A stretch of 64,000 nt of DNA from positions 124,001 through 188,000 of IMG/VR virus record IMGVR_UViG_3300033183_000491, one strand, 5' to 3'. Below, in pieces: positions 41,058 through 58,792 of the stretch; within the stretch, counting starts at the first letter, position 1, and the number at the start of each line of letters is the position of its first letter. A program made the translations under genes and the position numbers. The notes under the pieces are model-generated. The model did no database searches and was not told the origin of the DNA. It saw only the letters and a program-made list of their open reading frames with translations.

Positions 41058-42995
41058 ATGGCAAACTACACACTCGGAAACGGTGACGGAATCCAGATTT
41101 GGAATCAAAGTAGTGCATCTACTAAGATTGCTCAAGGAAGTGATTCTGTTGAAATTAACGATATTGTAATTTCAGGTAATTCACCAAAACTTACAGTTCC
41201 TGTCGGGAGTCTATATTTAGGTGCAACGCAGATTACTGTTGAGGCGACAGAACTTAATACACTTGATGGTTTAACAGCTTCTACTACAGAACTTAATTAC
41301 TTAGATATTACTACTTTAGGTACAGCGCAAGCATCAAAAGCAATTACTGTTGATGGTTCATCACAAGTAGATGCTAGTGCAATCACATTTACAGATTTAG
41401 GTACAGTTACTACTGTTGATATTAATGGTGGTACTCTTGACGGAGTAACTATTGGAGGAGCTTCTGCAGGTGCAGGTACATTTACATCTTTAGATTGTAA
41501 TGACGGAGCATTTGCGATTGCAAATCTAGACATTGATGGCGGGACTGATATTGGTGCTGCTTTAGTCGATAGTGACTTATTTATTGTTGACGATGGAGCA
41601 GGTGGAACAAATAGAAAATCTGAATTATCACGTCTTAAAACTTATTTAGAGACATCATCACTTTCATTTTCTGGAGCAAATACATTTGAAAACGCTACAG
41701 GACAAACTTTCCAAGGTGATGAAGGAAACGCAGCTTCAATTTATCTTAAGGCAGATCAAGGTGATGATGCAGGTGACTCTTGGGAAATCTCTGTTGCTGA
41801 TGGTGGCGTATTAACATTCGGAAATGACTCAGCAGTTCAAGGAACTTATGCAGCTCACGTTACTCTTACACCAAATGCAGTCGCTGGTTCATCTTCAGCA
41901 TTATTTGCTGGAAATCTTACAGTTAATGGTGACCTTACTGTTAATGGTGATACAACTACACTTAGTACTTCTACTTTAACTGTCGAAGACATCAATATCG
42001 TAGTTGCAAATGGAGCAGCAGACGCAGCAGCAGCTGATGGTGCTGGTTTAACTATTGACGGTGCAGATGCTACTTTAACTTGGGTTAATGCTAGTTCTCA
42101 TCTCGCTTTTAATAAAGATGTTAACTTCATTACAGACGGTATCAAGATTAATGGAACAGCAGTTACTGCTACTGCAGCAGAACTTAATACATTAGATGGA
42201 ATCACAGCTAATGTTGGTGAACTTAATGTTCTTGACGGAATTACAGCTTCAACTTCAGAACTTAATCTTCTCGATGCAACAGCAGGATCAACATTAGCTT
42301 TAGCAGCTGGTGACGGTCTTATTATCAATGATGCATCTGATGGTAATGCAACAAAGAAAGTGCTTGTTAGCGATCTTACAAGTTTCTTTGCTACAAGTGG
42401 TTCTACAACAGCTGATAATATTACATCAGGATCAAGTGCAGTAGAAATTACTACGACTTCTGGTGACGTTGTAGTAGATGCCCCTACAGGACAAAGCGTT
42501 AATCTTCAAGTTAATGGCTCTGACGTTATTGAAGTTGCTGGTGGACGCGTTGACGTTTCACAACCTCTTATTCTTACAAATGCAGGTCTTAGCTTACAAC
42601 CAGCTGCAACACACCCAGCATTCTCTGTTGGACACGTTCTTGCTTTTGAAAGTAATGCTGCAAATGGTGGTTTAGAACTTGCAGATTGTGACGATACAGC
42701 AACTAGTTATCTAAATGCTCCTTTAGGTATTGCTTTAGAAACTTCTGCAGAAAACAGCACAAGTGCTATTATGGTTCATACTCTTCATGGTGCACGTGTT
42801 AATGTACAAATTTCTTCAAGTACAACAGCACAAGGACAATGGATTTACCTAAGCGACACACCCGGTGTTGCTACAACAACAGCACCGACAAGCGGTATGG
42901 TTTGGAGACTAGGTCTTTGTGTAGAACATAATGGAACTGCTGTAACTGATACTGATATTATTTGGATGCCACAATTCTTAGTAGATCTAGGATAA
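41058..42995 (+). CDS. Fibre protein with 13-aa ELNxLD repeats and a C-terminal beta-clip-like module
   Basis: G/A/T/S/D-rich; ELNTLDG repeats; DGGTDIG..LVDSDLFIVDDG module shared with 43743..45944; SD AAAGG. Confidence 0.75.
   Translation: MANYTLGNGDGIQIWNQSSASTKIAQGSDSVEINDIVISGNSPKLTVPVGSLYLGATQITVEATELNTLDGLTASTTELNYLDITTLGTAQASKAITVDGSSQVDASAITFTDLGTVTTVDINGGTLDGVTIGGASAGAGTFTSLDCNDGAFAIANLDIDGGTDIGAALVDSDLFIVDDGAGGTNRKSELSRLKTYLETSSLSFSGANTFENATGQTFQGDEGNAASIYLKADQGDDAGDSWEISVADGGVLTFGNDSAVQGTYAAHVTLTPNAVAGSSSALFAGNLTVNGDLTVNGDTTTLSTSTLTVEDINIVVANGAADAAAADGAGLTIDGADATLTWVNASSHLAFNKDVNFITDGIKINGTAVTATAAELNTLDGITANVGELNVLDGITASTSELNLLDATAGSTLALAAGDGLIINDASDGNATKKVLVSDLTSFFATSGSTTADNITSGSSAVEITTTSGDVVVDAPTGQSVNLQVNGSDVIEVAGGRVDVSQPLILTNAGLSLQPAATHPAFSVGHVLAFESNAANGGLELADCDDTATSYLNAPLGIALETSAENSTSAIMVHTLHGARVNVQISSSTTAQGQWIYLSDTPGVATTTAPTSGMVWRLGLCVEHNGTAVTDTDIIWMPQFLVDLG
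42180..42275 (+). repeat. 39-nt (13-aa) tandem repeat, three units; two further units at 41250-41300
   Basis: GAACTTAAT recurs at 42180, 42219 and 42258, and at 41250 and 41289 (period 39), encoding ELNxLD. Confidence 0.85.
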
Positions 42996-43011
42996 AATAG
43001 GTATAATTAAT

Positions 43012-43070
43012 ATCTCCAGTAATATATTTATTAACATCAATCCTAATTAAAATAATATATTACTGGAGAT
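43012..43070 (+). promoter_or_regulatory. Perfect 17-bp inverted repeat sequestering the SD of the 126-aa gene, with an internal ATATTTA (43024-43030)
   Basis: ATCTCCAGTAATATATT (43012-43028) is the exact reverse complement of AATATATTACTGGAGAT (43054-43070); GGAG at 43065-43068; ATG at 43075. Confidence 0.85.
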
Positions 43071-43074
43071 TTAA

Positions 43075-43455
43075 ATGTCAAGTAAAGAAAAAATTCTAAG
43101 AATAGGTTTAGGCGAAGCAATTTCAAGATTAATGAAACTTGAAAGTATGAGATCAAATAGACTTCACCCAATGCCAAGTCAAGCAATTGCTGAAAGAGAA
43201 ATGCTTTATTTAGCTCTAAATGAGATTAAAATTGATCTTGGTTTCGATTGTGATGATGATGGTCTTCCTGATTCTGTTGAAATTTTTGAACAAAGTGCTC
43301 GATCTTCTTGTTGCCGACTAGTTCAGTCTGAAGATAGTGGTCCGAAAAAGTCTAGAATTAATAGAGCAAAAGTTCAAAGAGGACAAGTTACAAAACAAGA
43401 AAAACCTAAAGAAGAAATCAAAAAGGCAAGAAAATCTCGCTCTAGAAAGAAATAA
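43075..43455 (+). CDS. Hypothetical protein with a DxDxDG-like loop and a K/R-rich C-terminal tail
   Basis: DCDDDGLPDS; tail KKARKSRSRKK; SD GGAG lies inside a 17-bp hairpin. Confidence 0.75.
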   Translation: MSSKEKILRIGLGEAISRLMKLESMRSNRLHPMPSQAIAEREMLYLALNEIKIDLGFDCDDDGLPDSVEIFEQSARSSCCRLVQSEDSGPKKSRINRAKVQRGQVTKQEKPKEEIKKARKSRSRKK

Positions 43456-43482
43456 ATATAATACTTGAAAGGAGTCACAGAT

Positions 43483-43746
43483 TTGTCTCTGTTTGAACTT
43501 TTATTTTGCTATGGATTAACATTTGGAATGATGAATAAAACATCATGGATTCAAAACAGAATTCAAATTTTAGATGATATGTTAGCTTGCTCATATTGCA
43601 CTGGGTTTCATGCAGGCTGGATTAGTCTTTTGCTTTTACATCCTACATTATTTAAAGACCCACAAACTATTTTGTTTTGGGCCTTTGTTTCTTCGTCATT
43701 TAGTTATATTATAGACACTTTTGTTGCCTATTTAGAAGATAATTAA
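43483..43746 (+). CDS. Small membrane protein, DUF1360-like (CxxC in a hydrophobic segment); start re-called to the TTG at 43483
   Basis: MLACSYCTGFHAGW resembles the DUF1360 LLxCxxCxxxW motif; 2-3 hydrophobic stretches; AAGGAG 8 nt before TTG 43483. Confidence 0.6.
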   Translation: MSLFELLFCYGLTFGMMNKTSWIQNRIQILDDMLACSYCTGFHAGWISLLLLHPTLFKDPQTILFWAFVSSSFSYIIDTFVAYLEDN

Positions 43747-45944
43747 ATGATAAACCAGTTTGATCCATCACAAATAGCAGTAATGCTTGAATATTGACTT
43801 GATAGGGCGAATGTTGCAGCACCATCAATAGTTTCTGAACCACTTGGATCAACAGTAATTGTATTTGCTGACAGGTTCTTTATTTGATATTTGTAACCGC
43901 TTCCTGCTGTTGCAGCTGCTGGTAAATTAACTGTAATATCAACTGAAGGTGTCAACAAGAATACTTCTTCGATTCCTGATGTTGTTGAAATAGTGTATGT
44001 TGAGCTTGGTGATGCTGAAGTAATTGTCGGAACTGATCCTCCACCACCTCCACCTGCAGCAGCTGCCCAATGTAAACCATTTGCAGTTGTATATGTTAAC
44101 ACATCATTGTCAGCAGGAGATTCTACAGAAACATCAAGTGCATTTAATTCTGTTGCAGATGAAGTAACAATATCTCCATCTAAGAAAAGTCCTGAATCGA
44201 CACCATTATGAGCAAGAATATTAACTTTCGATTTAAATGAGTCTCCAGAGATACCATCAATTTGAAGACCCGCGTTAAATCCTGGTATTGCATAAAGATG
44301 AAGACGACCAACATCTAAATTGCTTCCTGCAGCTGGGTCTAAAATTCTACAATTGATATTGGCATATATATTGTTTGCACCTGATGCGCCGGTAACATTT
44401 CCTTTGAAAGTAACACTACCAATAATATCATTTGCTGCAGGACTTGCCGAGTCAGCTTTAAAAGTAATATTTGCAGAAGATGAACCAGTATAATCACTAA
44501 GTAATGTAAAACTTGGATCATTGATACTAGCACCACTCATCTTTAAAATCAAGCCATCATCAGCGTCATGTTCAAGTCTAATTTCTTGATCATTACCAAA
44601 ATATAAAATTGAACCATCACCAAGGTATAGGTCTGACCAAGTATTAGATGCACTCCCTAAAGTTCTTCCGTTATTTGTTCCAGGGTACAAGTTTCCTGAA
44701 ATTTCTGTGTTAGTTCCTCCTAAAATATTTGTACCTGTTTGGCCAACACAAGTTGTAATAGGCGCGTAAAATTCTGCACGACCGTTTTGATTTCTATTAA
44801 AATTTAAAACGTCGATTGGTGAAGACCCTGTATTTGTGTGTTTAAGAGTAAATGCTCCTGAACCTGAATTGTTTATTATAAGGCTTCCAGAAGATGTTTC
44901 AATATTAACATTTGTACTTGCTGTTGTAATATCACTAGCAGCAACACTACCGCCTCCTGCGACTGTAAACGTACCTGTGTCTGTTGCAGAAGCATCTCCA
45001 CTTACAGATGAGAAAATATATTTCTTAAGTCTTGTAAGAGCAGACTTTCTGTTTGTTCCTGCTGCACCATCATCAACAATAAATAAATCACTGTCAACAA
45101 GATCAGCACCAATATCTGTACCACCATCTAAATCAAGTGATGTTAAAGAAACTTTATTTGCATCTGAGATTGTGTTTAACTTTGCATTTTCAATCGAACC
45201 TGCTAACATTGCATTAGTAATGCCGCTTGCAGAAACGTCGAGTGTATTTCCTGTTTTAGTTAATCCATCTCCTGCGATAATTTCTCCTGCTCCACTAAAT
45301 TGTGAGAAATCAAGAGAATCAGTCCCTACAACATCGCTTCCTGTGTTTGACGTACAAACAAATCCTTTATCTGCATTAACTGTTCCTTCTTCAACAAAGA
45401 CGAAAATACCAGCAGCTGCATCTGAAGCTGATAGGTCATCTGCTCTTGTCGGTGCGCCAGAAGCTGCAACAATATAGATACCATTTTCAGAAGCTGTAGA
45501 CTGATCTTTAACAAGTATTCTGTCACCAGTTGCCAGTGTAACTGAGGTGTCTAATGTGTCACCATTTTCTAGATCTGTAGCTAGTGTAACTGGACCAGTT
45601 GTAGCTGCTCTTACAGAAGATTTTACGTCTAATCCTTGTAATACAGAATCAACATAAGCTTTAGTTGCAGCATCACTTGAAGCTGAAGGCGCGCCAACAT
45701 TAACAATTCTTTGTGAACTTAAAGAAAGTTGTCCTGTAAGAGTAGCATTAGCAAGTGATGAAGACCCTGCAACAGTAAGTCCTTGTTCAATTGTCAAAGG
45801 TGCATCTTTTACTTTAAGAACATTACTCTCTTCAGTGATAGATGATGTTCCATAAACTGATTTTGTTTGGTGAACTTCGTTCCATAATTTTGAGCTGCTT
45901 CCTAGCGTGCCAACATTATTGACTTTAGGTACTAAATTAGCCAT
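43743..45944 (-). CDS. Mosaic fibre protein (733 aa)
   Basis: DAATKAYVD..., DRILVKDQ..ENGIY module, AGDGLTKTGN, DGGTDIG module, C-terminal LP..A...IKN...TIDG...DGSNWFII domain. Confidence 0.8.
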   Translation of the reverse strand: MANLVPKVNNVGTLGSSSKLWNEVHQTKSVYGTSSITEESNVLKVKDAPLTIEQGLTVAGSSSLANATLTGQLSLSSQRIVNVGAPSASSDAATKAYVDSVLQGLDVKSSVRAATTGPVTLATDLENGDTLDTSVTLATGDRILVKDQSTASENGIYIVAASGAPTRADDLSASDAAAGIFVFVEEGTVNADKGFVCTSNTGSDVVGTDSLDFSQFSGAGEIIAGDGLTKTGNTLDVSASGITNAMLAGSIENAKLNTISDANKVSLTSLDLDGGTDIGADLVDSDLFIVDDGAAGTNRKSALTRLKKYIFSSVSGDASATDTGTFTVAGGGSVAASDITTASTNVNIETSSGSLIINNSGSGAFTLKHTNTGSSPIDVLNFNRNQNGRAEFYAPITTCVGQTGTNILGGTNTEISGNLYPGTNNGRTLGSASNTWSDLYLGDGSILYFGNDQEIRLEHDADDGLILKMSGASINDPSFTLLSDYTGSSSANITFKADSASPAANDIIGSVTFKGNVTGASGANNIYANINCRILDPAAGSNLDVGRLHLYAIPGFNAGLQIDGISGDSFKSKVNILAHNGVDSGLFLDGDIVTSSATELNALDVSVESPADNDVLTYTTANGLHWAAAAGGGGGGSVPTITSASPSSTYTISTTSGIEEVFLLTPSVDITVNLPAAATAGSGYKYQIKNLSANTITVDPSGSETIDGAATFALSSQYSSITAICDGSNWFII

Positions 45945-45968
45945 TATCTTTCCTTTTCGATTTATTTA

Positions 45969-45975
45969 TAAATAT
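45969..45975 (-). promoter_or_regulatory. Candidate late promoter ATATTTA (palindrome TATTTATAAATA at 45963-45974)
   Basis: 24 nt upstream of the fibre gene ATG at 45944. Confidence 0.55.
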
Positions 45976-45992
45976 AAAGTAATTTTTCTTAA

Positions 45993-46268
45993 TTAAGTTT
46001 TTGGCGTAATATCGCCATTTTCGTCTAATTCAAAGTTATCATCTGTATTTTGAAGTATATCATCAGGTAAATTTACTGTAAGCGTTCCTGAATTGTTTGT
46101 TTCATCGATATCAACAAGAAACAAGCCAGTACCGTTTGTTAAGTCGTCTTGAATAGTATAATCAGATCCGTTAGCTATAAAAAGACTACCGTCTCCAACG
46201 ACTTTTGTGCTTAAAGCAAATCCGTTATTGTTTTCATCGACGTTTATTTTTTTAATTCCGTAAGACAT
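45993..46268 (-). CDS. Small hypothetical protein, possible fibre adaptor
   Basis: SD AAGGA; C-terminal FELDENGDITP is similar to FEFDSEGNVMP of 57715..58239. Confidence 0.6.
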   Translation of the reverse strand: MSYGIKKINVDENNNGFALSTKVVGDGSLFIANGSDYTIQDDLTNGTGLFLVDIDETNNSGTLTVNLPDDILQNTDDNFELDENGDITPKT

Positions 46269-46287
46269 TTTTAATCCTTATAAAATA

Positions 46288-49200
46288 TTAAATTATTTCC
46301 CAAGAGTCTACACCATCGCTAATCAAATCTAAACTTTGTCCTGGTGTTTGTGAATCTGTCATAACAAAAGAAGCTAATCCTTCAATATTATCGCCACTAT
46401 AAGGTATGACGGTTAGAAGGTTTGTTCCAGCTTTGAATTTGATCCTTAGTTGCTGGCCAGCTACTGTACTACTTACTTGGGGTAATGTAATGTTAATAGC
46501 TGAATTTGTTGTATTTACGCTATAGTGGTAATTTATTTGTGCATTAAATGATGTTGTCTTTGCTGAATATGTATAATGCATATTCGTTAATTGTGAACCA
46601 TCGACAGCAGGAAGTTTAGCATTAGCATCTAATTGTACAATATTATTAGCAGCAGTTCCTACGTCTAAGGCAGCAGCAGTTCCTAATGTTGGTAAGTCTG
46701 TCCAGCTTAAGACTCCGTTTCCATCTGTTCTAAGAACTTGATTTAAGTTTCCGCTAGATGTAGGAAGTGTCAGAGTATAATTTGCTGCAGCAGAGTGTGC
46801 TGGTCCTTGAATAGCTACCCAGTGTGTATTTTGTTCACACTTAAATCTAATTAGACCACTACCTCTTGTTGAGTTACCTTGAAGTGTAACATACCCTGCA
46901 CCGTTTGGATCAAGGTTGATGTGATATCCTAAACTTGTTGTTCTAATATCATATCCCCCAAGATCTAGATGTCCTCCTAGTACAGGCGAAGAATCTTCTG
47001 ATAGTGATTCAATGCCTCCTGTAGAATCAGACCATACAACATGTCCATTTGCATTATCCCAAGTTAAAACTTGTCCATCAGTAGGTGTATCATGACCAAT
47101 CTGAGTAACTTGACCATCTTGATTTGCTTTTAAGAACGTGTTGTGTGTAAAGTTACCCCAGTTTGACCCTAGATATGCACCAAAAACTCCTTTTGTTGAA
47201 TTAAATTCAATATCAAAGTCTGTATTAAGATCTGTATCAGCACCTTTAACTTTTTCAATATGGAAGAATGGATAAGGACCAGATAAGTCAATTCTTCTAG
47301 ATGAATCTGTAAATATAAACTTTCTACTTGCAGATTGAAGTACTAAATTAGAGTCTGAATTGTTTCCATAAGAATCAGCGATCAGTGCTTGTTGTGTACC
47401 TAAAACAAGAGACTTAGCTTGCGCAGTAACTGCTGATTCACCTGTAATCAAGATTTCAGATCCAGGATAGCCTGTTCCTCCAGCTCCTTCTGATGTTAAA
47501 GTCGTAAGAGTTCTTAAATTCATTCCGTCTTTAAATCTAATTTGTCGAGTATAATCTCCATTACTTAAAGATGAACTTATGACAAGAGAATCTGCAACAC
47601 CATTTAGATTAAAATCAATGTCTGCACTTGCAGAAGCGTTTGTTATTTCTATATTACCTGTACTACCAAGAGTCAATGTTCCGTTAGATGTTTCAAAAGC
47701 AATATTTCCACTGCCTTGAGTAATATCATCAGCAGAAGTTGATGTAGCTAATCCACTAACAAAATTAGCTTTGGTCATTTTCTTAAGATTGTTATTATCT
47801 TCAGAATCTGCTAATAAAATAATGTCATTGTCGTTAATTGCAAGTTTTTCAGTTTGACCTGTTAATGCTAAAGATTCTAAACTAAGTGTACCTGTACTTG
47901 TAATAGAAGCATCGCCAGAAACTTTTCCAAAGTTATAAGCAGCAATACTAGATGCTTCTACTTGATAGTTTATTCCTGAAGCTTCGTTATCTACTATAAA
48001 TAGATCTGAGTCTGTAATAGAAGCTAAATTATTTCCTCCATCAATATCAATAGAACTTAAAGCGACTTTGTTAGCAACTGTGAGAGTATTAAGCTTAGAG
48101 TTAGCAATACTCCCTGCAAGCATTGCACTTGTAATTCCGCCGCTTTTAACTTTAATGTTGTCATTAACATCTATTTCGATAGAAGCGTTATCCACATTAG
48201 CATCAATAACATTGCCATTCTTTGTTAAGCCAGCACCAGCGTCAACTTGGCCAGCTGAAGAGAATTGATAAACTGAAACGTCATCTGTTCCAACTACAAA
48301 TGTTGATGGATCTGAGACAACTTGAACCCATCCTGTACCTTCATTTGTCGTACCACTAGCAACAAATACGTATGCACCAGGAATTTCGTTAGATTCGTCA
48401 CAATATCCACATCGTGTCAAAATCCAGTCAGTAGCAGCGTCACCTATTTGTGATACATAATATCGACCATTTTGAAATGCTGATGTTTGGTCTTTTAATA
48501 AGACGCCGTCATATTGTGCCCAAGTAGTTACACCATCAATGTCTAATGTAGCACTTGCTCCTAGATTAAGAGTTGCACCTACACCATCATCTGCAATTCC
48601 ATTATCATATGTTCCTACTAAGTTTTGTGTTGTTGCAGCAAGAACTGAAGGTTTTGCAATGATTCCTTGTGCTACTTCGTCAACGTAAGCTTTATTAGCA
48701 GCATCACCATTTTCAGTTGGATTTGCAAGATTTGTAATCTTATTAGAGTTAAGATTTAAATCAACACTTTGTCCTGTTAAATCAACCGATGCTATTTCTG
48801 TATTGGAAGAGATCACCAGATTACCTGAGTTAACACTTATTTCAACGTTTGATGTATTGTTTGAATCTAACGTCCCCTTATCAACACGATCAATCTGGAG
48901 ATATTTTGGAGCTGTGACTGCATATGGATTGACTCTTGTATTAATCTTAAGACTGTTCTTTGATGCCATTAAGATTTCGCCGTCTGTTTGTGTACCATCA
49001 CCTGCTACTAAATGTAATCCGTGTGCAGATTGAGTCACAACATCCATTCCAATGTTACCACCAGTTATAAATCTTGTATTACGAGTTCCTGCGTGTGATG
49101 ACTGATTATACGCGTCATTTGTAAAAATACCTGCATAACTCTGCACATTACCTTCAGGGTCAGCCTCACCTACATCGTTTGTATGCGCTGCACCTTTAAC

Positions 49201-49746
49201 TCTTAATGCAGTTGCATTATCTTTTTGACCAATAATAACACCACTTGCTGTTAAGTCTTGACCTATTTGGACGTGTGACGAAGAGTTACCAATTAAAATA
49301 TCACTACTACTACCTATTTCAGATGAAATCCTTAGTTCTCCTGAAGTGTTGTTTATTAAGGAGTTGGTTCCATCGTGAGTTATAACTAAATCACTATCAG
49401 AACCCCATTTTAATTGAAAAGTATCTGGAATAATTGACGAAGAATTTTGGTCAAATGTTAATACTTTTGAATTCTCTGCTTGTCCTAATACAGATAAATC
49501 ATTATAATTCAACTCTAAAGAAGATGCAGTTATTCCTAATGACAAGATCGAATTATCAGGATTCTTGTTTATCCAAAATCCTTGTGTAGAGTCGTATATT
49601 AAAAAATGATTATCTTGAATATTATTTATATTGACATTGTTTAGATTATTAATATTACCGAGTGATAACAATTCTTCTACTTCGATTACTTCTGATGACA
49701 GTAGACTTGGATTGTCAATGTCACTATTAATAAAAATCGTATTCAT
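46288..49746 (-). CDS. Mosaic fibre protein (1152 aa)
   Basis: DAANKAYVD, VLLKDQ..QNGRY module, AGAGLTKNGN, SPVLGGHLD, GQVLTWD, C-terminal domain ending DGVDSWEII as in the 733-aa fibre. Confidence 0.8.
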   Translation of the reverse strand: MNTIFINSDIDNPSLLSSEVIEVEELLSLGNINNLNNVNINNIQDNHFLIYDSTQGFWINKNPDNSILSLGITASSLELNYNDLSVLGQAENSKVLTFDQNSSSIIPDTFQLKWGSDSDLVITHDGTNSLINNTSGELRISSEIGSSSDILIGNSSSHVQIGQDLTASGVIIGQKDNATALRVKGAAHTNDVGEADPEGNVQSYAGIFTNDAYNQSSHAGTRNTRFITGGNIGMDVVTQSAHGLHLVAGDGTQTDGEILMASKNSLKINTRVNPYAVTAPKYLQIDRVDKGTLDSNNTSNVEISVNSGNLVISSNTEIASVDLTGQSVDLNLNSNKITNLANPTENGDAANKAYVDEVAQGIIAKPSVLAATTQNLVGTYDNGIADDGVGATLNLGASATLDIDGVTTWAQYDGVLLKDQTSAFQNGRYYVSQIGDAATDWILTRCGYCDESNEIPGAYVFVASGTTNEGTGWVQVVSDPSTFVVGTDDVSVYQFSSAGQVDAGAGLTKNGNVIDANVDNASIEIDVNDNIKVKSGGITSAMLAGSIANSKLNTLTVANKVALSSIDIDGGNNLASITDSDLFIVDNEASGINYQVEASSIAAYNFGKVSGDASITSTGTLSLESLALTGQTEKLAINDNDIILLADSEDNNNLKKMTKANFVSGLATSTSADDITQGSGNIAFETSNGTLTLGSTGNIEITNASASADIDFNLNGVADSLVISSSLSNGDYTRQIRFKDGMNLRTLTTLTSEGAGGTGYPGSEILITGESAVTAQAKSLVLGTQQALIADSYGNNSDSNLVLQSASRKFIFTDSSRRIDLSGPYPFFHIEKVKGADTDLNTDFDIEFNSTKGVFGAYLGSNWGNFTHNTFLKANQDGQVTQIGHDTPTDGQVLTWDNANGHVVWSDSTGGIESLSEDSSPVLGGHLDLGGYDIRTTSLGYHINLDPNGAGYVTLQGNSTRGSGLIRFKCEQNTHWVAIQGPAHSAAANYTLTLPTSSGNLNQVLRTDGNGVLSWTDLPTLGTAAALDVGTAANNIVQLDANAKLPAVDGSQLTNMHYTYSAKTTSFNAQINYHYSVNTTNSAINITLPQVSSTVAGQQLRIKFKAGTNLLTVIPYSGDNIEGLASFVMTDSQTPGQSLDLISDGVDSWEII

Positions 49747-52700: not shown

Positions 52701-54161
52701 AACATATTGTTTGTTTGCAGCGTCAGCATCATTTTGCGGTTGCTCTACAAGCGTTAAAGAGTTTAAAGATGCATCACCATTTGATTGAATATAATTTGTT
52801 AAATCAGGTAAATCAGCTGCTGTGATAAAGTCTGTAATTTCATCGTCTGTAACATAGTTGTCTAAACTAGATGAAGTTAAGAATCCCTGGTCTGAAACCC
52901 AGCCTTGAGTTGCAAAATATGCTGTTCTAGTGTCAATCTCTGATTGTGTTGGATCGTTAAACTTATATGTAAAAGTGAGTGGAATATTGTTGTTTGTAAA
53001 GAAAGTATCGTCAACATTTTCTATTCTTAAACTTTTTCCTCCTTGTGTTTCAAGACTTAGTTTTGTGTCTCCATTTGTGTTAGATGTAACTACTAAAACA
53101 TTACCACTGTCAGTACTTTGCAATTTTAATTTTGCATTGTCTGCTGCAGAGTCAGATTTTGCAATCATTCTTAATTCATCTGCTGATGTTTTAATAGAGT
53201 GAGTACCAACTGAAAGATCTCCTCCTAGAACTGGTGCAGGATCATCTTCGACTGCTTCTAATCCACCACTTCCTAGTTTAACCCATTTCATATTTGAAGT
53301 AGCAGTTCTAGAACTTCCATCTGTATGTGGAACTGTAAAGAATATCTTTTGAGTATTACTATCACCTTTTAATACAGCAACTCTTACTCCAGAAAAGTCA
53401 CTCGTAGCAATTAAGTCATTTGCTCTAACTGCAGGACCTTCTGCTGCAGAAACGATGTAAATACCATTTTCAGAAGGTGTGGCCTGATCTTTGACTAGGA
53501 CTCTGTCACCTGTTGTTAGAATCTGTCCATCAATCTCAATCCCGTTTACAAGTGCCGTTGTTAAATCAATCGGTTCTGTTGTTGCAAACTTAACATCTTC
53601 TAATGACGTAGTTACATTTTCATAGACCAAGCTCTCATTGACTAAAGTACCAATTTGTAAATTTTTAGATGCATTATCAATTCTTAAGTTTGAACTACCA
53701 AGATTTAAACCATCGTTAAGGAGATAAAGATCACGAATTGGTAAACTAGAAAGACCAAGATCAAAATCGCTTACTCTAGGAACAAAGTGACCTTGATCAT
53801 TTATGTACCACTTTTCATCACCTGATATTGAAAAAGATATTTTGTTCTCTAATGGGTCTGATGTCTTAATCGCTTCAACACTTGTCTGAGCACCTTCTTC
53901 ACCTTCGAAAATTTTATCGACCTGAGATGATCCTGCTGAAGAAGAACTTATTTTATAATGAATTCCTGATCCATCTTCAAAATTTTCTATGGTAATATTA
54001 TCTCCAGAAACTAATAAAGGTGCACCAGATGTGTTATTCAGGGTATCAGTTTTCATTTCTTGGATTAATCCAAGAGTTGCATTAATTCCTGCCCATCTTC
54101 TTGTTGGAAGGCCTAATTTTCCTTCACTATCTTGTCTAGGTACTAAATTCTTAGTTGCCAT
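49791..54161 (-). CDS. Mosaic fibre protein (1456 aa)
   Basis: N-terminus NLVPR..GKLG...W as in the 733-aa fibre; two DR(V/I)LV(K/R)DQ..NGIY modules; three DxD.(F/L)(I/L)V.D...KK modules; SD AGGAG. Confidence 0.8.
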   Translation of the reverse strand: MATKNLVPRQDSEGKLGLPTRRWAGINATLGLIQEMKTDTLNNTSGAPLLVSGDNITIENFEDGSGIHYKISSSSAGSSQVDKIFEGEEGAQTSVEAIKTSDPLENKISFSISGDEKWYINDQGHFVPRVSDFDLGLSSLPIRDLYLLNDGLNLGSSNLRIDNASKNLQIGTLVNESLVYENVTTSLEDVKFATTEPIDLTTALVNGIEIDGQILTTGDRVLVKDQATPSENGIYIVSAAEGPAVRANDLIATSDFSGVRVAVLKGDSNTQKIFFTVPHTDGSSRTATSNMKWVKLGSGGLEAVEDDPAPVLGGDLSVGTHSIKTSADELRMIAKSDSAADNAKLKLQSTDSGNVLVVTSNTNGDTKLSLETQGGKSLRIENVDDTFFTNNNIPLTFTYKFNDPTQSEIDTRTAYFATQGWVSDQGFLTSSSLDNYVTDDEITDFITAADLPDLTNYIQSNGDASLNSLTLVEQPQNDADAANKQYVDLVVQGLREVLQPVRLATTTNINLADQLENNDLIDGVNVSTGDRILVRDQNDPRDNGIYIVQASGAAVRSSDFELNDEVSAKFVFVEEGDTYAQSGFICTSPETADTVGNDDILFAKFSAAGQTEAGAALSKTGNVFDVKTDGTSIEVDPDNNYLKIKNVDSTLLTGTIDVARLPDIPVSKISGDIIASSVNENAINPDDIDTVLNSIADDDLFIVRDVSANSPNGLTTKSTASVLKNYIRADITDSIGQVGFSVVDDNGVQKLSSSLTSKSISEQTLYNSDPNDPNSDGPLSDDDTFLVYDDSSTLLKKVAFSDIKSANSFDIENFNPLSINDSVTDNDLIVLKDSESTTHKKVTISEFKSGLNIPNDLEYIPVTNAGLITPTVNPGDIYKANKHYHIKDNVSDGSLFTFNLTSFNDISEGDIVKISMSYPDSPNSYYEESHNNRGRFSSLKLNVKVDLGNDLVIYYNGTDFHSPKEFLYDGTRWFASILDKKDFHDNSYYELTGTQAPIEFSNISLWRQKNSVTLGDTGATTTRSVNIPSALEAYENGFINGDKKTFYFTDIALQKLIINSSQNDIWQRSDATNNSNYLEFGFTNQKTIKFSGEGIKKVVITFIEEYNNKYCWLIENYIDEVEDVTLPSALTGSSEDSNKVLKFDSSGTSLIKGTIQSVNISDNAIITSKINENAVTKSKLEKVNPNKVLGYVGTLTNPQNVSEVNVLDNLSDDIPDKHSNLATAEAIKQHISASVGSLSVSSLSGGDLNSYNINDDNLTVQLDLEDTNSIANVSFEASSRTIEEYYMSIKSGFDFYRLAILGNFYNVDNITRKIYLPSAESVRTSYGFGSRITIKVDRGPNFNGSIWVPFGVYPHPDDNKYGNPGAITKENSFPQCTFIGKLSHGAYASYDRLNFYKNTSLSLRASSSLLLTFELTRNSFGNITKVHGNDNWTTTAPGDIIDEVDAYVWQFIGSSR

Positions 54162-54243: not shown

Positions 54244-54825
54244 TTAACTGTTTAAATTGTATCCATTAGGTGCGAATGGATTATAAAAATAAAATCCTGT
54301 GCCGTCTCTTCCTGTAGTGCCTAAAGCTGCACTTTGAGACGATCCTGTAGGTCCGCTAAAGTCGATTCTAAATGCATCTCCTCCACCTCGGTCACCTACC
54401 ATTGCTTTAATAGGATAATAAACACCAGCACTTAAGCTAATCGATCCATCACCATTGATTTCACCGTGTGCTCCTCCTGCATCACAAAGAGCATTATTTT
54501 TATTTAGGTCCCACTCTAGGCTTTTTGCATCATCACCAATCCATAAGTATCCAGCATCGTCACATCTAATTCTAAATTCCCAAGTCCCTGTAACATCTGG
54601 TTTAAAAAGGCCGCAAACTACGTGTGTATCTAAGTCTGCTATAACAGACGATCTGTTGATCTGAGTTAAAGCTCCTTCACCTGACCAAGAAGAGTCCAGG
54701 TTTCCTTCTAACCTGCTTGGATCATCATTTGTCCCGGGATGATCACCTGAAGTGTCTGCATTTATGTATGCATCAAACTTTCTAATATAAAGTCCACTTT
54801 TAAGTTGTTTTCTAAATATAAACAT
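54244..54825 (-). CDS. Stand-alone PA14/GLEYA carbohydrate-binding domain protein
   Basis: GLFKPDVTGTWEFRIRCDDAGYLWIG...HG...ISLSAGVYYPI...GGG is the PA14 consensus; TAATG overlap with the upstream fibre gene. Confidence 0.85.
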   Translation of the reverse strand: MFIFRKQLKSGLYIRKFDAYINADTSGDHPGTNDDPSRLEGNLDSSWSGEGALTQINRSSVIADLDTHVVCGLFKPDVTGTWEFRIRCDDAGYLWIGDDAKSLEWDLNKNNALCDAGGAHGEINGDGSISLSAGVYYPIKAMVGDRGGGDAFRIDFSGPTGSSQSAALGTTGRDGTGFYFYNPFAPNGYNLNS

Positions 54826-57692
54826 TAGTTCCTCGTAAAGAATAAGTTAGCTCTTAACCCTTGCGCATTTGCAGGTGTAGCTGTTATAGCTAAAGTTAAT
54901 GCATCACCTGCGTCACAAGAAGAATTAGAAACAGTTGTTGTTGAGCCAGACGTTGTTGTTGTTCCTAAAGTTAAAGTAATCATAGACAAACTATCAGTTG
55001 TGTTTGTTAAAGTTACTGTTACATCACCAGAAGTTGTATGTTGGTCTAGATATAATTCTAATTTAGAAACTGTAAGACCAAACGGACAATTAAATCTGAA
55101 TGCATTCGTATCTGTTTGTAGATCAACCCCTGGAATACTCAATTCTGCAACAATAACTTCTTCGGGTTTGTCCCAAGTTAAAGAAGAACCATTATACATT
55201 AAAAAGTCATTTGTTGAAGGAGCTTCGACAGAAGTATCTAATTTGTTTAGTTCATCTGCAGTAGATGTTACTAATGTACTTCCAAGAGTTAAGCCTTCGT
55301 CCACGCCGTTATGACGAGGTATAATCGTTATACAACCGTCAGCAGTTCCATCAATTCTAAACCCTTCGTATCCACCACCATTTCCTCCACCTTGAACGTA
55401 TATATTGAGTCGGCCTTCTTCAGCACCAACTGTAGTGTCAATCATTTGAGTTCTAATCTTTGAAAACTCATGAATTCCGCCACCGGCATTTTCTCCATAA
55501 AACTCTATAGTCCCTGCATATCCTGCGCCAGTTGAATAATTTTGAATTCTTAAAGTAGGACCTAAAGAGTTTGTATCACCATTTTCAGTCGATATAGTAA
55601 ATCTAGGCTCAAAAGTCCCTGAGGCAGAAGATGGCATCGACATAGTTAATCCTTCATCAGGACTATGTCTAAGATAAACGTCGCTGTCATTTCCAAATTT
55701 AATATAAGAACCGTCTCCTAAGTATAAATATTTCCACTCAGCATTGACAGCACCTAAATTATACGTATTAACTGCTGAAGGTAGTAGATGTCCTGTGATT
55801 CCAAACCCATTAGGATCTAAGTTGCCACCTAATTGAGGTGTTGTATCATCAACTAAGTCTGAGCTACCTGAAGAAGCTGTTGCAAAAGTTAGCTGGCCAC
55901 TTCCATTTGTTTGTAAAACTTGTCCAGAAGTTCCATCGGACGTTGGAAATGAATATGCATTATTAAATGTAATAATACCAGTTTCATCAATTTTGAGTCT
56001 GTTAGAAGTTGTACCGCCTGTTCCTGTATTAAATTCTAACGTACCACCATAAGTTGAACCGCTTACTGTTGCACTTGATTTAATTACTGCACTTTCTAGA
56101 AAAGACGTTCCATTGTGGCCATACATTACAAATTTACCAAGCTCGTCTGCAGCAGAAACTGCAGTTGGTGTCGAAACTGTTCCCCTTGCTTTTTGTAATA
56201 AAACATCAGGACCATCTGCAGATGTATGATACTGGTCTATTCTCATTGAACCTTCATATTGTACGTCTCCCACTAAGTGTAATGTTCTTGCGGGAGAACT
56301 AGTTCCAATACCTATACGATCATTTGTTGTATCTATCGTTAATAAATCTGTAGACAATACACTAGAACCATCACTATTAGCAACCAATATAGCATTATTA
56401 GTTAAAGTAGAAGGCATTGAGTAACCATCACCAACCAAAAAAGTTCCTGATAAGTCTGGTAAAGTTAAAGTTCTGTTTGATGAAAGAGAGCTTTGGCCTT
56501 GAATTTGTATGTAGTTTGTTCCGTGTTTTTCGCCTGTTCCATCTTCATATATTCTTAAGGGATTATCATAATGAAAACCAACAGAGTTAACGTCAATCCA
56601 CATACGTGCATTTTCTGGGTGTGCTCCAGTTCCACCAGATGCATCTGATGCACCTTTGTCTGGGAGTTCGAGATAAAAACCAACTCTTCTATTTGCAGCA
56701 CCTGCTTGATCATCAATTGCCCCAAACCATTGTTCATACCATAATTGGCCTTGTCCGTATTGTCTTGTGTTAGAAGAGTACCAATTTGCAAACTTTACCT
56801 TTACAGTATCTTCATTGTAAGCAAAAAATTGCGACCCTGATCCTCCGAGAGATAGCCTATTAGATACTGTGATATTCTGTGATGTCAATAAACCATTACT
56901 ATCAGCACCTCCAGTATTGTTCCAAGTTAGATTTGAACTTAAAGACACGCTAGAACTGTCACTATTAGATGTCAAGACAGCGTTATTAGTAAGTGTTGAA
57001 GGCAATTGATAGCTACTCTGTGTAGACTGATTCGATGCATTACCAATAAAGAATTTACCTTCATTTAAGTTAGGTGTAGCATTTGTTCTTCCCGCACCTC
57101 CAACCAAAACCTCACCATTATTCACATGAGCTTTTACAATTTTACCAATGTTTTGAATTAAGTTAGATCCTGTTGGTGCTGATGTTTGGAATCCTCCTGC
57201 AGTTGTAGAGCTTACATAAAGTGTGTCACCCTCACTATTCGCACCGTCTGTATCGATACCTTTAAATAAACCGCTGTAAACAACATATCCTTCAGCTTCA
57301 GCTGCAATATCGTTTTGAACAAAACCAAAAGCAGGCATTGTTGCAGAAGAATTTGACTGCGCTAAAGAAACTTCTGGTTTATTACCACTATGTCCTGATA
57401 TGTAAACTAATTGTCCTTTAGTTAAAGCAGTTGTAGTAGAAGGGTTTTTTACCGGGAATGATAACGCTTTTGGCAAAGAGTCACCTTGTAAAAGAGCAAT
57501 ATCTCCATCTTCGTCAGGAAAGTTAATTGTTCTATCATCAGTAGGATCAGTAACTGTTAATTGTAATTCAAAATCGTTACTAGTTTCTCCTTCAAATGCT
57601 AGCCCACCTGAACCAATAACTATTCTATCAGTTGGTTTTAAGACCTTTTTTGATCCATTTTCATAATATACAAACTTATCAATATCTGCCAT
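54825..57692 (-). CDS. Mosaic fibre protein (955 aa)
   Basis: TDPTDDRTINFPD, beta-clip-like GQLVYIS...PAFG...GDTLYVS...IQNIG, RIGIGTSSP, FPTSDGTSGQVL, TPQLGGNLD, WKYLYLGDG, ELNKLD. Confidence 0.8.
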   Translation of the reverse strand: MADIDKFVYYENGSKKVLKPTDRIVIGSGGLAFEGETSNDFELQLTVTDPTDDRTINFPDEDGDIALLQGDSLPKALSFPVKNPSTTTALTKGQLVYISGHSGNKPEVSLAQSNSSATMPAFGFVQNDIAAEAEGYVVYSGLFKGIDTDGANSEGDTLYVSSTTAGGFQTSAPTGSNLIQNIGKIVKAHVNNGEVLVGGAGRTNATPNLNEGKFFIGNASNQSTQSSYQLPSTLTNNAVLTSNSDSSSVSLSSNLTWNNTGGADSNGLLTSQNITVSNRLSLGGSGSQFFAYNEDTVKVKFANWYSSNTRQYGQGQLWYEQWFGAIDDQAGAANRRVGFYLELPDKGASDASGGTGAHPENARMWIDVNSVGFHYDNPLRIYEDGTGEKHGTNYIQIQGQSSLSSNRTLTLPDLSGTFLVGDGYSMPSTLTNNAILVANSDGSSVLSTDLLTIDTTNDRIGIGTSSPARTLHLVGDVQYEGSMRIDQYHTSADGPDVLLQKARGTVSTPTAVSAADELGKFVMYGHNGTSFLESAVIKSSATVSGSTYGGTLEFNTGTGGTTSNRLKIDETGIITFNNAYSFPTSDGTSGQVLQTNGSGQLTFATASSGSSDLVDDTTPQLGGNLDPNGFGITGHLLPSAVNTYNLGAVNAEWKYLYLGDGSYIKFGNDSDVYLRHSPDEGLTMSMPSSASGTFEPRFTISTENGDTNSLGPTLRIQNYSTGAGYAGTIEFYGENAGGGIHEFSKIRTQMIDTTVGAEEGRLNIYVQGGGNGGGYEGFRIDGTADGCITIIPRHNGVDEGLTLGSTLVTSTADELNKLDTSVEAPSTNDFLMYNGSSLTWDKPEEVIVAELSIPGVDLQTDTNAFRFNCPFGLTVSKLELYLDQHTTSGDVTVTLTNTTDSLSMITLTLGTTTTSGSTTTVSNSSCDAGDALTLAITATPANAQGLRANLFFTRN

Positions 57693-57714
57693 TTTAATTT
57701 ATTCTTTCTATTTT

Positions 57715-58239
57715 CTATTCTGTTTGACAAGCGTTGACATACATGTCTTCATCGATAGGCATAACGTTGCCTTCACTGTCAAATTCAAAATATCTGTCTG
57801 ATGCTGTTTCTCTTATCGTCATAGTATATTGTATGTGTTCTAAAGTTCCTTCGTCATTAAAAGTATTAAGGTCTAAAGCAAACAATCCTGTTGTTCCATC
57901 TAGTATGTTTGTTGGAATAAGATTATTTTCATCTAAAGGATCAATTTGCCACAAAGAATCTTCAGACCTATCGTTATAAAGATGTCCTCTTATGATAACA
58001 TCTCCTCCAAATTCTACGACAGAATCTGGTAAGTTATTTTTCTTTCCACAGATTTTTCCGCTTACATAAAGATAAGTTGATTCGTCAACATTTTGAAGCA
58101 TGCTTTCTGGAATAGATCCACGATCATCTAATGCTAATTCTGGAGTATTAGGATAGACAATTAATTTTGGCCCTGTTTCACCAGAACCAATTATCTTTGA
58201 GGTTTTAATTTGATTAGCTAAAAAGTCTCTTGCTGCCAT
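57715..58239 (-). CDS. Hypothetical protein, possible fibre adaptor
   Basis: SD AAGG; FEFDSEGNVMP motif shared with 45993..46268; directly precedes the 955-aa fibre gene. Confidence 0.65.
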   Translation of the reverse strand: MAARDFLANQIKTSKIIGSGETGPKLIVYPNTPELALDDRGSIPESMLQNVDESTYLYVSGKICGKKNNLPDSVVEFGGDVIIRGHLYNDRSEDSLWQIDPLDENNLIPTNILDGTTGLFALDLNTFNDEGTLEHIQYTMTIRETASDRYFEFDSEGNVMPIDEDMYVNACQTE

Positions 58240-58244
58240 AATAT

Positions 58245-58463
58245 TTACCTTGATATAACTATATAATGAACATTTATTTCACTATTACTGGATTTGTTTA
58301 TTTTAAAATTATTTGTAGAAGTTTCTGATATGAAAATGTTTTCGCATGAATCAGAAGTTATTTTTATTACTGGGATTTGATTATAATTACTAGTAAGATT
58401 TACTATTTTTTCACTTTCATTAGAAAGAATTGTAACTTTTCCAGTCTCAAATTCAACTGCCAT
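58245..58463 (-). CDS. Small H-type-lectin-like beta-sandwich protein
   Basis: YNQIPVIKIT...NIFIS..STNNFKI...VHYIVI; paralogous to 58466..58792; SD GGAG. Confidence 0.5.
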   Translation of the reverse strand: MAVEFETGKVTILSNESEKIVNLTSNYNQIPVIKITSDSCENIFISETSTNNFKINKSSNSEINVHYIVISR

Positions 58464-58465
58464 AA

Positions 58466-58792
58466 TTATTCTCCTTCATAAACATGGATATGAACTTTTC
58501 CCGTAAAGTTATTTGAACTTTCAACAGTAATACTAGAAGTAGTTAGAGAAGTAATAAACACGTTGACATTTTCATCTTCAGGTGTTAAAGCAATAACAGG
58601 AAGAGAATTATAATTTTCTGTAAAGAAATAATCCTCACTATAAGAGTTTACAAAGTCTATCGTAGCAACTTCAACTTTGATACCTCCTGCATCTATAACT
58701 TCTTGAGTTGTTAGATATTGTTTATAAATTGGCTTGACACGAATAAGCGGATAATTTTTTCTTAATCTATTTGCATCGAATAATTTAGACAT
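58466..58792 (-). CDS. Small protein with an H-type-lectin-like beta-sandwich
   Basis: FTENYNSLPVIALT...NVFITSLTTSSITV...VHIHV; SD AAGGA. Confidence 0.5.
   Translation of the reverse strand: MSKLFDANRLRKNYPLIRVKPIYKQYLTTQEVIDAGGIKVEVATIDFVNSYSEDYFFTENYNSLPVIALTPEDENVNVFITSLTTSSITVESSNNFTGKVHIHVYEGE

What the first reader, a model, noticed from the sequence alone, without database searches (positions are those of the whole stretch)
41058..58792. An 18-kb array of five mosaic fibre genes built from one shared module set
Seen: the 645-, 733-, 1152-, 1456- and 955-aa proteins reuse the same modules in different orders. These include DA(A)xKxYVD + DR(I/V)LVKDQ..NG(I/R)Y + AGxGLxKxGN (733, 1152, twice in 1456); D.DLFIV.D...(K/R)K (645, 733, 1152, several in 1456); ADxITxGS/ASDITTAS (645, 733, 1152); D..PxLGGxL (1152, 1456, 955); W..LYLGDG..FGND....H (733, 955); and ELNxLD (645, 733, 955). 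No S74 intramolecular-chaperone or depolymerase domain is apparent. Inference: a multi-fibre virion diversified by intragenomic module shuffling, possibly giving broad or switchable adsorption.
Basis: partly seen in the sequence, partly recalled or inferred. Interest (0 to 1): 0.6.

Follow-up and report, generated by a model that had tools for sequence, protein, structure and literature searches.

The report
Mosaic fibre gene cluster, jumbo marine phage
A 239.5-kb marine phage carries five large virion-fibre genes and a small sugar-binding gene built from shared protein modules that are recombined differently in each close relative, which is a clear but ordinary example of how phage fibre genes evolve, with no sign of a programmed switch.

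Summary
The paralogous modules are old: 33-50% amino-acid identity, and at most 120 nt at 76% at DNA level. Each module-A copy groups with its positional orthologue in a relative, not with its paralogues.

Shuffling is real between relatives. The 1152/733 slots show a different architecture in each of the four related loci whose DNA was compared with the window. The 955 slot shows three forms. Flanking genes stay colinear at 55-93% identity.

Fold searches place two modules with known phage fibre parts: a C-terminal knob like T4 gp10 and CBA120 TSP4 (Z 12.1) and a beta-rich fibre domain (Z 8.0). Module A is found in more than 7,500 proteins and has no Pfam family and no solved-structure match. 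A GLEYA/PA14 lectin ORF overlaps the 955 stop codon (TAATG) and co-occurs with the 955 C-terminus.

The genome has no invertase, tyrosine recombinase or reverse transcriptase, and metagenome contigs show no inverted form. Verdict: a new member of a known kind.

The parts
41058..42995 (+). 645-aa fibre protein. ELNxLD repeats at res 65-83 and 375-406; DIDGG/DSDLFIV module at res 153-200 (41514-41657); ADNITSGS at res 452; C-terminal Phage_cement_2-like domain at res 514-570 (42597-42767).
   Evidence: Orthologues are 73-75% identical in G001 and L021.
43075..43746 (+). Two small ORFs (126 aa at 43075-43455; 93 aa at 43465-43746) downstream of the 645 gene on the same strand. No family match. 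Possible assembly or accessory proteins; this is inference only.
   Evidence: They are 60-81% identical to their counterparts in relatives and always follow the 645 homologue.
43743..45944 (-). 733-aa fibre protein. Module A at res 56-328 (44961-45779; confident core 105-215); DIDGG/DLFIV at res 266-313; ASDITTAS at res 336; module B at res 415-626 (44067-44702); ELNALD at res 599; gp10/TNF-like knob at res 637-733 (43746-44036).
45993..46268 (-). 91-aa ORF between the 1152 and 733 genes. It is conserved in L021 (66%) and L020 (49%) and absent where the two genes are one (G001).
46288..49746 (-). 1152-aa fibre protein. ELNYND at res 78; module A at res 310-623 (47878-48819); DSDLFIV near res 577; ADDITQGS at res 672; PxLGG motif block at res 899-938 (46933-47052); knob at res 1050-1152 (46291-46599).
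49791..54161 (-). 1456-aa fibre protein. Partial module A at res 188-397 with PxLGG at res 307; full module A at res 462-732 (51966-52778); three DLFIV-like repeats at res 697-833; unique C-terminal ~600 aa (49794-51614) with no family match.
   Evidence: Only 29% identical to its colinear G001 counterpart.
54244..54825 (-). 193-aa GLEYA/PA14 lectin-domain protein. Its ATG overlaps the 955 stop codon (TAATG).
   Evidence: Pfam PF10528 at 54.6 bits (cut-off 26.2) and PF07691 at 31.1 bits. Overlap shown; the same overlap occurs in L009. Absent from G001.
54825..57692 (-). 955-aa fibre protein. N-terminal anchor-like res 1-67; Phage_cement_2-like domain at res 85-194 (57111-57440); widely shared mid domain at res 260-384 (56541-56915); PxLGG plus module B at res 616-840 (55173-55847); ELNKLD at res 814; C-terminal domain at res 853-955 (54828-55136).
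57715..58792 (-). They contain no fibre modules and have no family match.
   Evidence: 57-64% identical in G001 and L009

Best explanation
The region encodes a paralogous family of long, beta-rich, probably trimeric virion fibre proteins plus a translationally coupled PA14/GLEYA lectin. The host genome is a complete 239.5-kb marine myovirus of the T4 superfamily.

The proteins are assembled from a pool of at least eight modules:
- module A, a repeatable shaft 'bead';
- the DIDGG/DLFIV linker;
- the ADxITxGS motif;
- the PxLGG motif;
- module B, a beta-rich fibre domain of the kind seen in T5 pb1, T4 gp34 and Bdellovibrio fibres;
- ELNxLD repeats;
- a gp10/TNF-like knob;
- a cement-like beta domain.

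Each protein ends in a different distal part: a knob in 733 and 1152, a cement-like domain in 645, a small C-terminal domain plus the separate lectin for 955, and a unique ~600-aa region in 1456.

Inferred mechanism: the virion displays several receptor-binding ends at once, giving multivalent or multi-receptor adsorption. Diversity arises by recombination between phages at the short conserved linker motifs, and by duplication or deletion of modules. It does not arise from a programmed switch.

Shown: the modules, their folds, their reshuffling among relatives, and the absence of switch enzymes. Inferred: virion location, trimer state, receptor binding, and the pairing of the 955 C-terminus with the lectin.
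For: Genome context:
- gp23-type capsid protein, sheath, portal, large terminase and a gp6-like baseplate wedge are present.
- The record is complete, with terminal repeats.

Modules:
- blastp and phmmer define the shared modules.
- The motifs are confined to these genes.

Folds of the 733 protein (model; structure search):
- Knob res 637-733 vs CBA120 TSP4 res 78-175: Z 12.1, rmsd 1.9 over 90 residues.
- Knob vs T4 gp10: Z 9.6. Knob vs T4 gp9: Z 9.0. Knob vs the Pa223 capsid-spike knob: Z 10.1.
- Module B vs Bdellovibrio Bd2439 fibre: Z 8.0. Vs T5 pb1: Z 6.6. Vs T4 gp34: Z 5.7.
- The 955 protein also hits Bd2439 by sequence (E 1.6e-4).

Distribution of module A:
- PHROG tail-fibre families match.
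- More than 7,592 homologues were found, one labelled COG5301.
- Isolate-phage records mostly label it tail fibre.
- Many proteins carry 2-5 copies that cluster within the protein, which fits a repeatable shaft unit.

Reshuffling among relatives:
- G001 has a single 1660-aa gene made of the 1152 N-terminal half, several B modules and a 733-type knob. Identity is 75-77% up to residue 681, right after ADDITQGS, and then diverges.
- L021 has a 489-aa gene, a 91-aa ORF and a 1152-aa gene with two A copies.
- A Logan contig has a 663-aa gene in the 733 slot.
- The 955 slot holds 1087 aa in G001, diverging after residue 852, and 346 aa in L009.
- Flanking genes are 55-93% identical.

Native origin: GC3 of the fibre genes (0.14-0.19) equals the genome mean (0.165 +/- 0.028), so they are not recent imports.

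Lectin pairing:
- GLEYA/PA14 domain.
- TAATG overlap conserved in the window and L009.
- The lectin and the 955 C-terminus are both present in the window and L009, and both absent in G001.
Against: - There is no direct evidence that any of these proteins is in the virion or on the tail.
- Module A has no solved structural relative (Foldseek best E 0.42; VIA best Z 4.5), and some databases label it 'head decoration'.
- The Phage_cement_2-like domains hint at capsid attachment for 955 and 645.
- The cluster is separated from the baseplate genes by an exonuclease gene.
- The lectin pairing rests on three genomes only, and the complex prediction could not be run.
- Monomer models of trimeric fibres are weak outside the globular domains (mean pLDDT 68).
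Confidence: 0.7

Rival explanations
1. The genes encode consecutive segments of one or two long compound fibres joined end to end, as T4 gp34-gp35-gp36-gp37 form one long tail fibre. They would then not be five independent fibres.
For: - The phage belongs to the T4 superfamily (gp23-like capsid protein, gp6-like wedge).
- The genes lie in tandem on one strand with short gaps.
- In G001, two of the genes appear as one 1660-aa gene, showing that the pieces can function in a single chain.
- gp10-like knobs are docking domains in T4 and CBA120; this comes from established knowledge, with the fold match.
Against: - No sequence homology to gp34-37 was found.
- 733 and 1456 share an N-terminal NLVP...G.LG...W motif, as if each attaches independently.
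- Each protein has its own distinct C-terminal end.
- The 645 gene lies on the opposite strand with its own small ORFs.
Confidence: 0.2
2. Some of the proteins, especially 955 and 645, are capsid or neck fibres anchored through the cement-like domain. They would then be head decoration rather than tail fibres.
For: - PF09956 Phage_cement_2 scores 26.6 bits against the 955 N-terminal fragment (cut-off 24) and 22.8 bits against the 645 C-terminal fragment.
- ESM Atlas neighbours of the 955 N-terminus carry PF09956.
- The 733 knob matches the Pa223 capsid-spike knob at Z 10.1. That spike is a trimeric triple beta-helix on the capsid 3-fold axes (bioRxiv 10.1101/2025.06.11.659172).
- Module A carries 'head decoration' labels in PHROG 2647 and in some actinophage records.
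Against: - Scores lie at or below the Pfam cut-off. Direct pairwise alignment of the two cement-like regions is not significant (z 1.7).
- The same 955 N-terminal domain is annotated tail-fibre-like in cyanomyoviruses and in Flavobacterium phage immuto.
- Homologues of the 955 mid domain sit beside sheath and tube genes in other phages (L013 and L016).
- The database labels are not experimental.
Confidence: 0.15
3. Programmed switching of host range, either by inversion between the convergent 645 and 733 genes (Mu G or P1 C segment style) or by a diversity-generating retroelement.
For: - 645 (+) and 733 (-) are convergent and share an inverted 120-nt repeat at 76% identity (41526-41645 / 45018-45137). 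This is the best-conserved shared module (73% amino-acid identity).
- Module A co-occurs with Mtd_N in some ESM Atlas clusters.
Against: - The complete genome contains no resolvase/invertase, no tyrosine recombinase and no reverse transcriptase; the controls for these searches were positive.
- Contigs about 95% identical from four studies are colinear with no strand-change joints.
- The orientation is the same in G001, L021 and the Logan contig.
- No TR/VR-like repeat was found.
Confidence: 0.02

Closest known systems
Mosaic tail-fibre genes of tailed phages (T-even gp34/36/37/12 shared motifs; P2/Mu/P1/lambda fibre mosaics). Cited from established knowledge, not tested here.
   Same: Fibre genes are built from shared modules. 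Exchange occurs at short conserved motifs. Distal ends vary between close relatives while flanking genes stay conserved.
   Different: There is no detectable sequence homology to those fibres. The module set is a different one, typical of marine phages, including module A, which has no Pfam family and no solved structure.
gp10-like (XD) domains of T4 gp10 and CBA120 TSP4, as used in branched receptor-binding complexes
   Same: The C-terminal knob of 733 (and, by homology, of 1152) has this beta-sandwich fold. Z 12.1 to TSP4 res 78-175 and Z 9.6 to T4 gp10 res 49-146.
   Different: Here the domain is the extreme C-terminal tip, not an N-terminal docking platform. No depolymerase beta-helix is present.
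Bdellovibrio bacteriovorus chimeric (mosaic adhesive trimer) fibres, e.g. Bd2439 (PMC10769870; PDB 8ol4/8onf)
   Same: One genome holds a family of long fibres that share shaft modules and carry different tips. Module B resembles the Bd2439 C-terminal domains (Z 8.0). The 955 protein hits the Bd2439 sequence at E 1.6e-4.
   Different: Those are fibres of a bacterial predator's cell surface, not of a virion. Only one domain is shared.
Multi-fibre jumbo myoviruses (RaK2/phiK64-1 branched tailspikes; 'hairy' CBB and phAPEC6). Found in the literature search.
   Same: A jumbo genome with many large fibre genes in one cluster.
   Different: No homology was shown. The fibres here lack enzymatic domains. 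The morphology of this phage is unknown.
Pseudomonas phage Pa223 capsid spike gp52 (PDB 9ny6; bioRxiv 10.1101/2025.06.11.659172)
   Same: A trimeric beta-helical fibre ending in a knob of the same fold (Z 10.1).
   Different: gp52 is 295 aa and sits on the capsid 3-fold axes through a 40-residue N-terminal anchor. No anchor homology was tested here.

Membership tests
Mosaic phage fibre gene family (modular exchange) | Significant shared modules among several fibre genes of one genome | tested here: met
   blastp E from 2e-49 to 7e-16 and phmmer hits. The motifs are absent from other ORFs.
Mosaic phage fibre gene family (modular exchange) | Module content differs between close relatives, with breakpoints at module borders | tested here: met
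   G001, L021, L020, L009 and a Logan contig were compared. Breakpoints fall after residue 681 of 1152 and residue 852 of 955.
Mosaic phage fibre gene family (modular exchange) | Proteins are virion (tail) components | not testable with these tools
   Only indirect evidence is available: fold matches, PHROG labels and gene neighbourhoods.
T4 long tail fibre set (gp34-gp37) | Sequence homology to gp34/35/36/37 | tested here: not met
   No Pfam, PHROG, NCBIfam or PDB-sequence hit to these proteins.
T4 long tail fibre set (gp34-gp37) | Shaft fold like the gp34 C-terminal region | tested here: inconclusive
   Z 5.7, rmsd 5.5 over 84 residues. This is below the level the tool regards as specific.
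gp10-like XD branched tailspike complexes (CBA120, G7C, RaK2) | gp10-like beta-sandwich domain | tested here: met
   Z 12.1 to TSP4 res 78-175 and Z 9.6 to T4 gp10.
gp10-like XD branched tailspike complexes (CBA120, G7C, RaK2) | The XD domains lie in the N-terminal part of a scaffold tailspike that also carries a depolymerase | tested here: not met
   The domain is at the C-terminal end, res 637-733. No depolymerase or S74 domain was found.
Invertible fibre segments (Mu G, P1 C; Gin/Cin) | Site-specific invertase gene | tested here: not met
   PF00239 and PF00589 are absent from the complete genome, with positive controls.
Invertible fibre segments (Mu G, P1 C; Gin/Cin) | Both orientations present in populations | tested here: not met
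   No strand-change joints in contigs of four runs. Relatives share the same orientation. Contigs can miss rare forms.
Diversity-generating retroelement (BPP-1 Mtd type) | Reverse transcriptase and a TR/VR repeat pair | tested here: not met
   PF00078 is absent. No near-identical repeat lies in the cluster.
Pfam PF09956 Phage_cement_2 | Score at or above the gathering cut-off (24 bits) | tested here: inconclusive
   955 scores 23.3 bits as a whole protein and 26.6 bits as an N-terminal fragment. The 645 C-terminal fragment scores 22.8 bits. Pairwise alignment between the two regions is not significant.
Pfam PF10528 GLEYA / PF07691 PA14 lectin domain (193-aa ORF) | Score above the gathering cut-off | tested here: met
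   54.6 bits against a cut-off of 26.2, and 31.1 bits against 24.

The most novel reading that the evidence does not exclude
Module A is a very widespread fibre 'bead' with no Pfam family and no solved structural relative. It carries a nearly invariant polar constellation (D..R.L.K.Q.....NG.Y....R..D). On this reading it is a ligand-binding (glycan-binding) unit rather than a passive shaft element. The four copies in three fibres, the knobs and the PA14 lectin would then make this jumbo phage a multivalent lectin array. The host could be SAR11, because the nearest isolate matches of several modules are Pelagibacter phages and the genome is about 25-29% GC.
Probability: 0.1. Interest if true: 0.65.

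Novelty: new member of a known kind. Interest (0 to 1): 0.35.

Why it matters
Fibre genes set host range. This locus gives a clean natural series: the same two or three gene slots are filled with different module combinations in relatives that are otherwise 55-93% identical. The recombination joints can be read off at short conserved motifs. That makes it useful for learning the grammar of fibre modules in uncultured marine phages, and it points to a very common domain (module A) that still lacks a structure and a function. It does not reveal a new mechanism.

Tried and rejected
- **Inversion switch.** The only sizeable inverted repeat is 120 nt at 76%. No recombinase is encoded. No inverted joints were seen. 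Rejected.
- **DGR.** No reverse transcriptase is encoded. Rejected.
- **Foreign origin of the GC-richer fibre genes.** GC3 equals the genome mean, so the excess GC comes from amino-acid composition. Rejected. The lectin ORF is a mild exception (GC3 0.232).
- **Recent intragenomic gene conversion.** The module-A tree groups copies by slot, not by genome. Rejected.
- **Knob copies in the 1456 C-terminal region.** I suspected these by eye. A knob HMM did not detect them. That HMM's seed was noisy because non-significant hits were included, so only its strong hits are used.
- **645 C-terminus vs 955 N-terminus.** Direct alignment is not significant (z 1.7). The link rests on borderline Pfam hits only.
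- **Searches that found nothing.** The search for related loci with the 1152 and 1456 proteins found no relatives. NCBIfam gave no hits. tblastn of the lectin against isolate phages gave no hits. PDB sequence searches for 733 and 1456 found nothing relevant. A literature search for DUF2190 gave nothing useful.

Full report
**Context**

The window is bases 124001-188000 of a 239,550-bp IMG/VR virus record with direct terminal repeats, rated 100% complete. The genome has about 25-29% GC. It encodes a T4 gp23-type capsid protein, a sheath, a portal, a large terminase, an SbcC-like nuclease, a gp6-like baseplate wedge and PhoH. It is therefore a jumbo myovirus of the T4 superfamily. The nearest isolate by large terminase is Flavobacterium phage immuto, at only 38.6% identity. 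Near-identical words of the fibre region occur in estuary, seawater and marine metagenomes from 10 studies.

**Observation check**

Every listed motif is present in the stated proteins, and none occurs in any other ORF of 60 aa or more in the genome. blastp and phmmer turn the motifs into modules:
- Module A, about 270 aa, runs from DAATKAYVD to DSDLFIV. It lies at 733:56-328, 1152:310-623 (41% identity, E 2e-49), 1456:462-732 (40%) and, as a partial copy, 1456:190-388 (36%).
- Module B lies at 733:415-626 and 955:632-840 (36%, E 3e-26).
- The DIDGG/DLFIV piece is the best conserved: 645:153-200 against 733:266-313 is 73% identical.

- A C-terminal knob is shared by 733, 1152 and a 201-aa ORF at genome position 193268-193873, outside the window.
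- A Phage_cement_2-like domain lies at the N-terminus of 955 (26.6 bits as a fragment) and the C-terminus of 645 (22.8 bits; cut-off 24). Direct alignment of these two regions is not significant, so this link is tentative.

Module order is mostly colinear: A, DLFIV, ADxIT, B, ELNxLD, knob. There are a few permutations. PxLGG lies before the full A copy in 1456 but after A in 1152. ELNxLD lies before DLFIV in 645.

**What the modules are**

An AlphaFold2 model of the 733 protein, built with 42 homologues, has three confident domains. Structure searches gave the following:
- The knob (res 637-733) matches CBA120 TSP4 res 78-175 (Z 12.1, rmsd 1.9 Å over 90 residues), T4 gp10 (Z 9.6), T4 gp9 (Z 9.0), a tailspike C-terminus of Acinetobacter phage Solidus (Z 11.6) and the knob of the Pa223 capsid spike (Z 10.1).
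- Module B matches the Bdellovibrio Bd2439 fibre (Z 8.0), T5 pb1 (Z 6.6) and T4 gp34 (Z 5.7). The 955 protein also hits Bd2439 by sequence (E 1.6e-4).

The module-A core (pLDDT above 90) has no solved relative. Foldseek's best hit is E 0.42 and the wide VIA search peaks at Z 4.5. It has no Pfam or NCBIfam family. Yet more than 7,592 proteins match the 733 protein at E ≤ 1e-10, mostly through this part. In 120 isolate-phage records the core occurs essentially once per genome (121 places). The labels there are 'tail fiber', 'tail protein' or 'head decoration'. Metagenomic proteins often carry 2-5 copies that cluster within the protein. Module A therefore behaves as a repeatable shaft bead.

**The lectin ORF**

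The 193-aa ORF at 54244-54825 is a GLEYA/PA14 lectin domain (54.6 bits). Its ATG overlaps the 955 stop codon as TAATG, both in the window and in relative L009. The lectin and the 955 C-terminal domain (res 853-955) are both present in the window and in L009. In L009 that C-terminal domain is 87% identical, against 60-64% for the flanking genes. Both are absent from G001. I infer a tip-plus-adhesin cassette.

**Shuffling**

Within this genome the paralogous modules are old:
- They share 33-50% amino-acid identity.
- DNA repeats reach at most 120 nt at 76%.
- GC3 of the fibre genes equals the genome mean.
- In a tree of module-A cores, each window copy pairs with its positional orthologue in G001 or with other phages' proteins, never with its own paralogues.

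Recent intragenomic shuffling is therefore not supported.

Between relatives, shuffling is obvious. Flanking genes (exonuclease, the 645 protein, the 126- and 93-aa ORFs, the 174- and 108-aa ORFs, PhoH) are colinear at 55-93% identity. The fibre slots differ:
- *G001* (211 kb) has one 1660-aa gene. It is 75-77% identical to 1152 up to residue 681, just after ADDITQGS, and then continues with several B modules and a 733-type knob.
- *L021* has a 489-aa gene made of the two ends of 1152 without module A, then the 91-aa ORF, then a 1152-aa gene with 733-like ends and two A copies.
- *A Logan contig* has a 663-aa gene in the 733 slot.
- *L020* shows yet another combination.
- *The 955 slot* holds 1087 aa in G001, identical in pattern up to residue 852 and then an extra B module. 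In L009 it holds 346 aa, with the internal modules gone.
- *The 1456 protein* is colinear with its G001 counterpart but only 29% identical.

**Switching**

The genome encodes no resolvase/invertase, no tyrosine recombinase and no reverse transcriptase; the control genomes gave positive hits in the same searches. Contigs about 95% identical from four studies run colinearly through 41000-46500 with no strand-change joints. Many other contigs match only the short conserved motifs and then diverge, which fits these modules sitting in many other contexts. Only assembled contigs were available, not raw reads, so rare forms could be missed.

**Mechanism and rivals**

The best reading (confidence about 0.7) is a set of virion fibres with different distal ends, giving multivalent adsorption, and diversified by recombination at linker motifs between phages. 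Three points remain open:
- whether the fibres are separate or are segments of compound fibres, as in T4 gp34-37 (about 0.2);
- whether some are head or neck fibres, given the cement-like domains, the Pa223-like knob and the 'head decoration' labels (about 0.15);
- what the strongly conserved polar residues of module A do (nearly invariant D132, R142, K146, Q148, N154, Y157, R167 and D170 in alignment A1).

**Comparison and novelty**

Mosaic fibre genes with exchangeable modules are a textbook feature of tailed phages. Jumbo phages with many fibre genes are also described in the literature. The Bdellovibrio chimeric fibre family (PMC10769870) is a close conceptual analogue. This locus is a new member of that known kind. 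It has a good natural series of recombinants and a common, structurally unsolved domain. Interest: 0.35.

Noticed in passing
window 54244-54825 (-), and L009 3977-4558: A PA14/GLEYA lectin-domain ORF overlaps the stop codon of the 955 gene (TAATG). Its GC3 of 0.232 is about 2.4 SD above the genome mean. It is absent from relative G001 and has no match in 50,697 isolate-phage records.
   Followed up: partly
genome G000:C1:193268-193873 (-), outside the window (equivalent to window position 69268-69873): A 201-aa mini-fibre ORF. It carries a module-B start motif (similar to 1456 res 101-163, 733 res 416-464 and 955 res 632-671) and the same C-terminal knob as 733 and 1152. It is a sixth family member, about 11.5 kb beyond the cluster.
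   Followed up: partly
window 49791-54161 (-): The 1456-aa protein is only 29% identical to its colinear counterpart in G001, while neighbouring genes are 55-86% identical. Its C-terminal ~600 aa matches no family in Pfam or PHROGs. It is a likely specificity determinant or a replaced allele.
   Followed up: partly
window 41058-45944; isolate-phage hits H1, H58-H60: The nearest isolate-phage matches of the 645 motifs, of module A and of the PxLGG region are Pelagibacter phages (HTVC106P, HTVC033P, HTVC115P, Mosig). Together with the ~25-29% GC and the marine habitat, this hints at a SAR11 host for a 239-kb phage. The large terminase, however, is nearest to a Flavobacterium phage (38.6%).
   Followed up: no
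window 43006-43076: A 23-nt inverted repeat (91% complementary, 25-nt loop) lies between the stop codon of the 645 gene and the start of the 126-aa ORF. It may be a terminator or attenuator hairpin.
   Followed up: no
733 protein residues 132-187 (window about 45384-45551), alignment A1: Module A has a nearly invariant polar set (D132, R142, L144, K146, Q148, N154, G155, Y157, R167, D170, G187) across 43 diverse homologues. That is unusual for a purely structural shaft element. Its function is unknown.
   Followed up: no
window 9015-39718 (-): A run of very large ORFs (1046, 1826, 890, 1025, 1163, 614, 614 and 610 aa) has no PHROG or Pfam match, apart from one gp6-like wedge. They are presumably a highly divergent baseplate and tail module. 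In G001, the ORFs just beyond the exonuclease (418 aa and at least 325 aa) have no counterpart in this genome.
   Followed up: no
955 protein residues 260-384 (window 56541-56915); loci L010-L016: This mid domain is 52-71% identical to parts of 334-1014-aa proteins in many other viral contigs. Some of those genes sit next to sheath and tube genes. It is a widely exchanged globular module of unknown role.
   Followed up: partly
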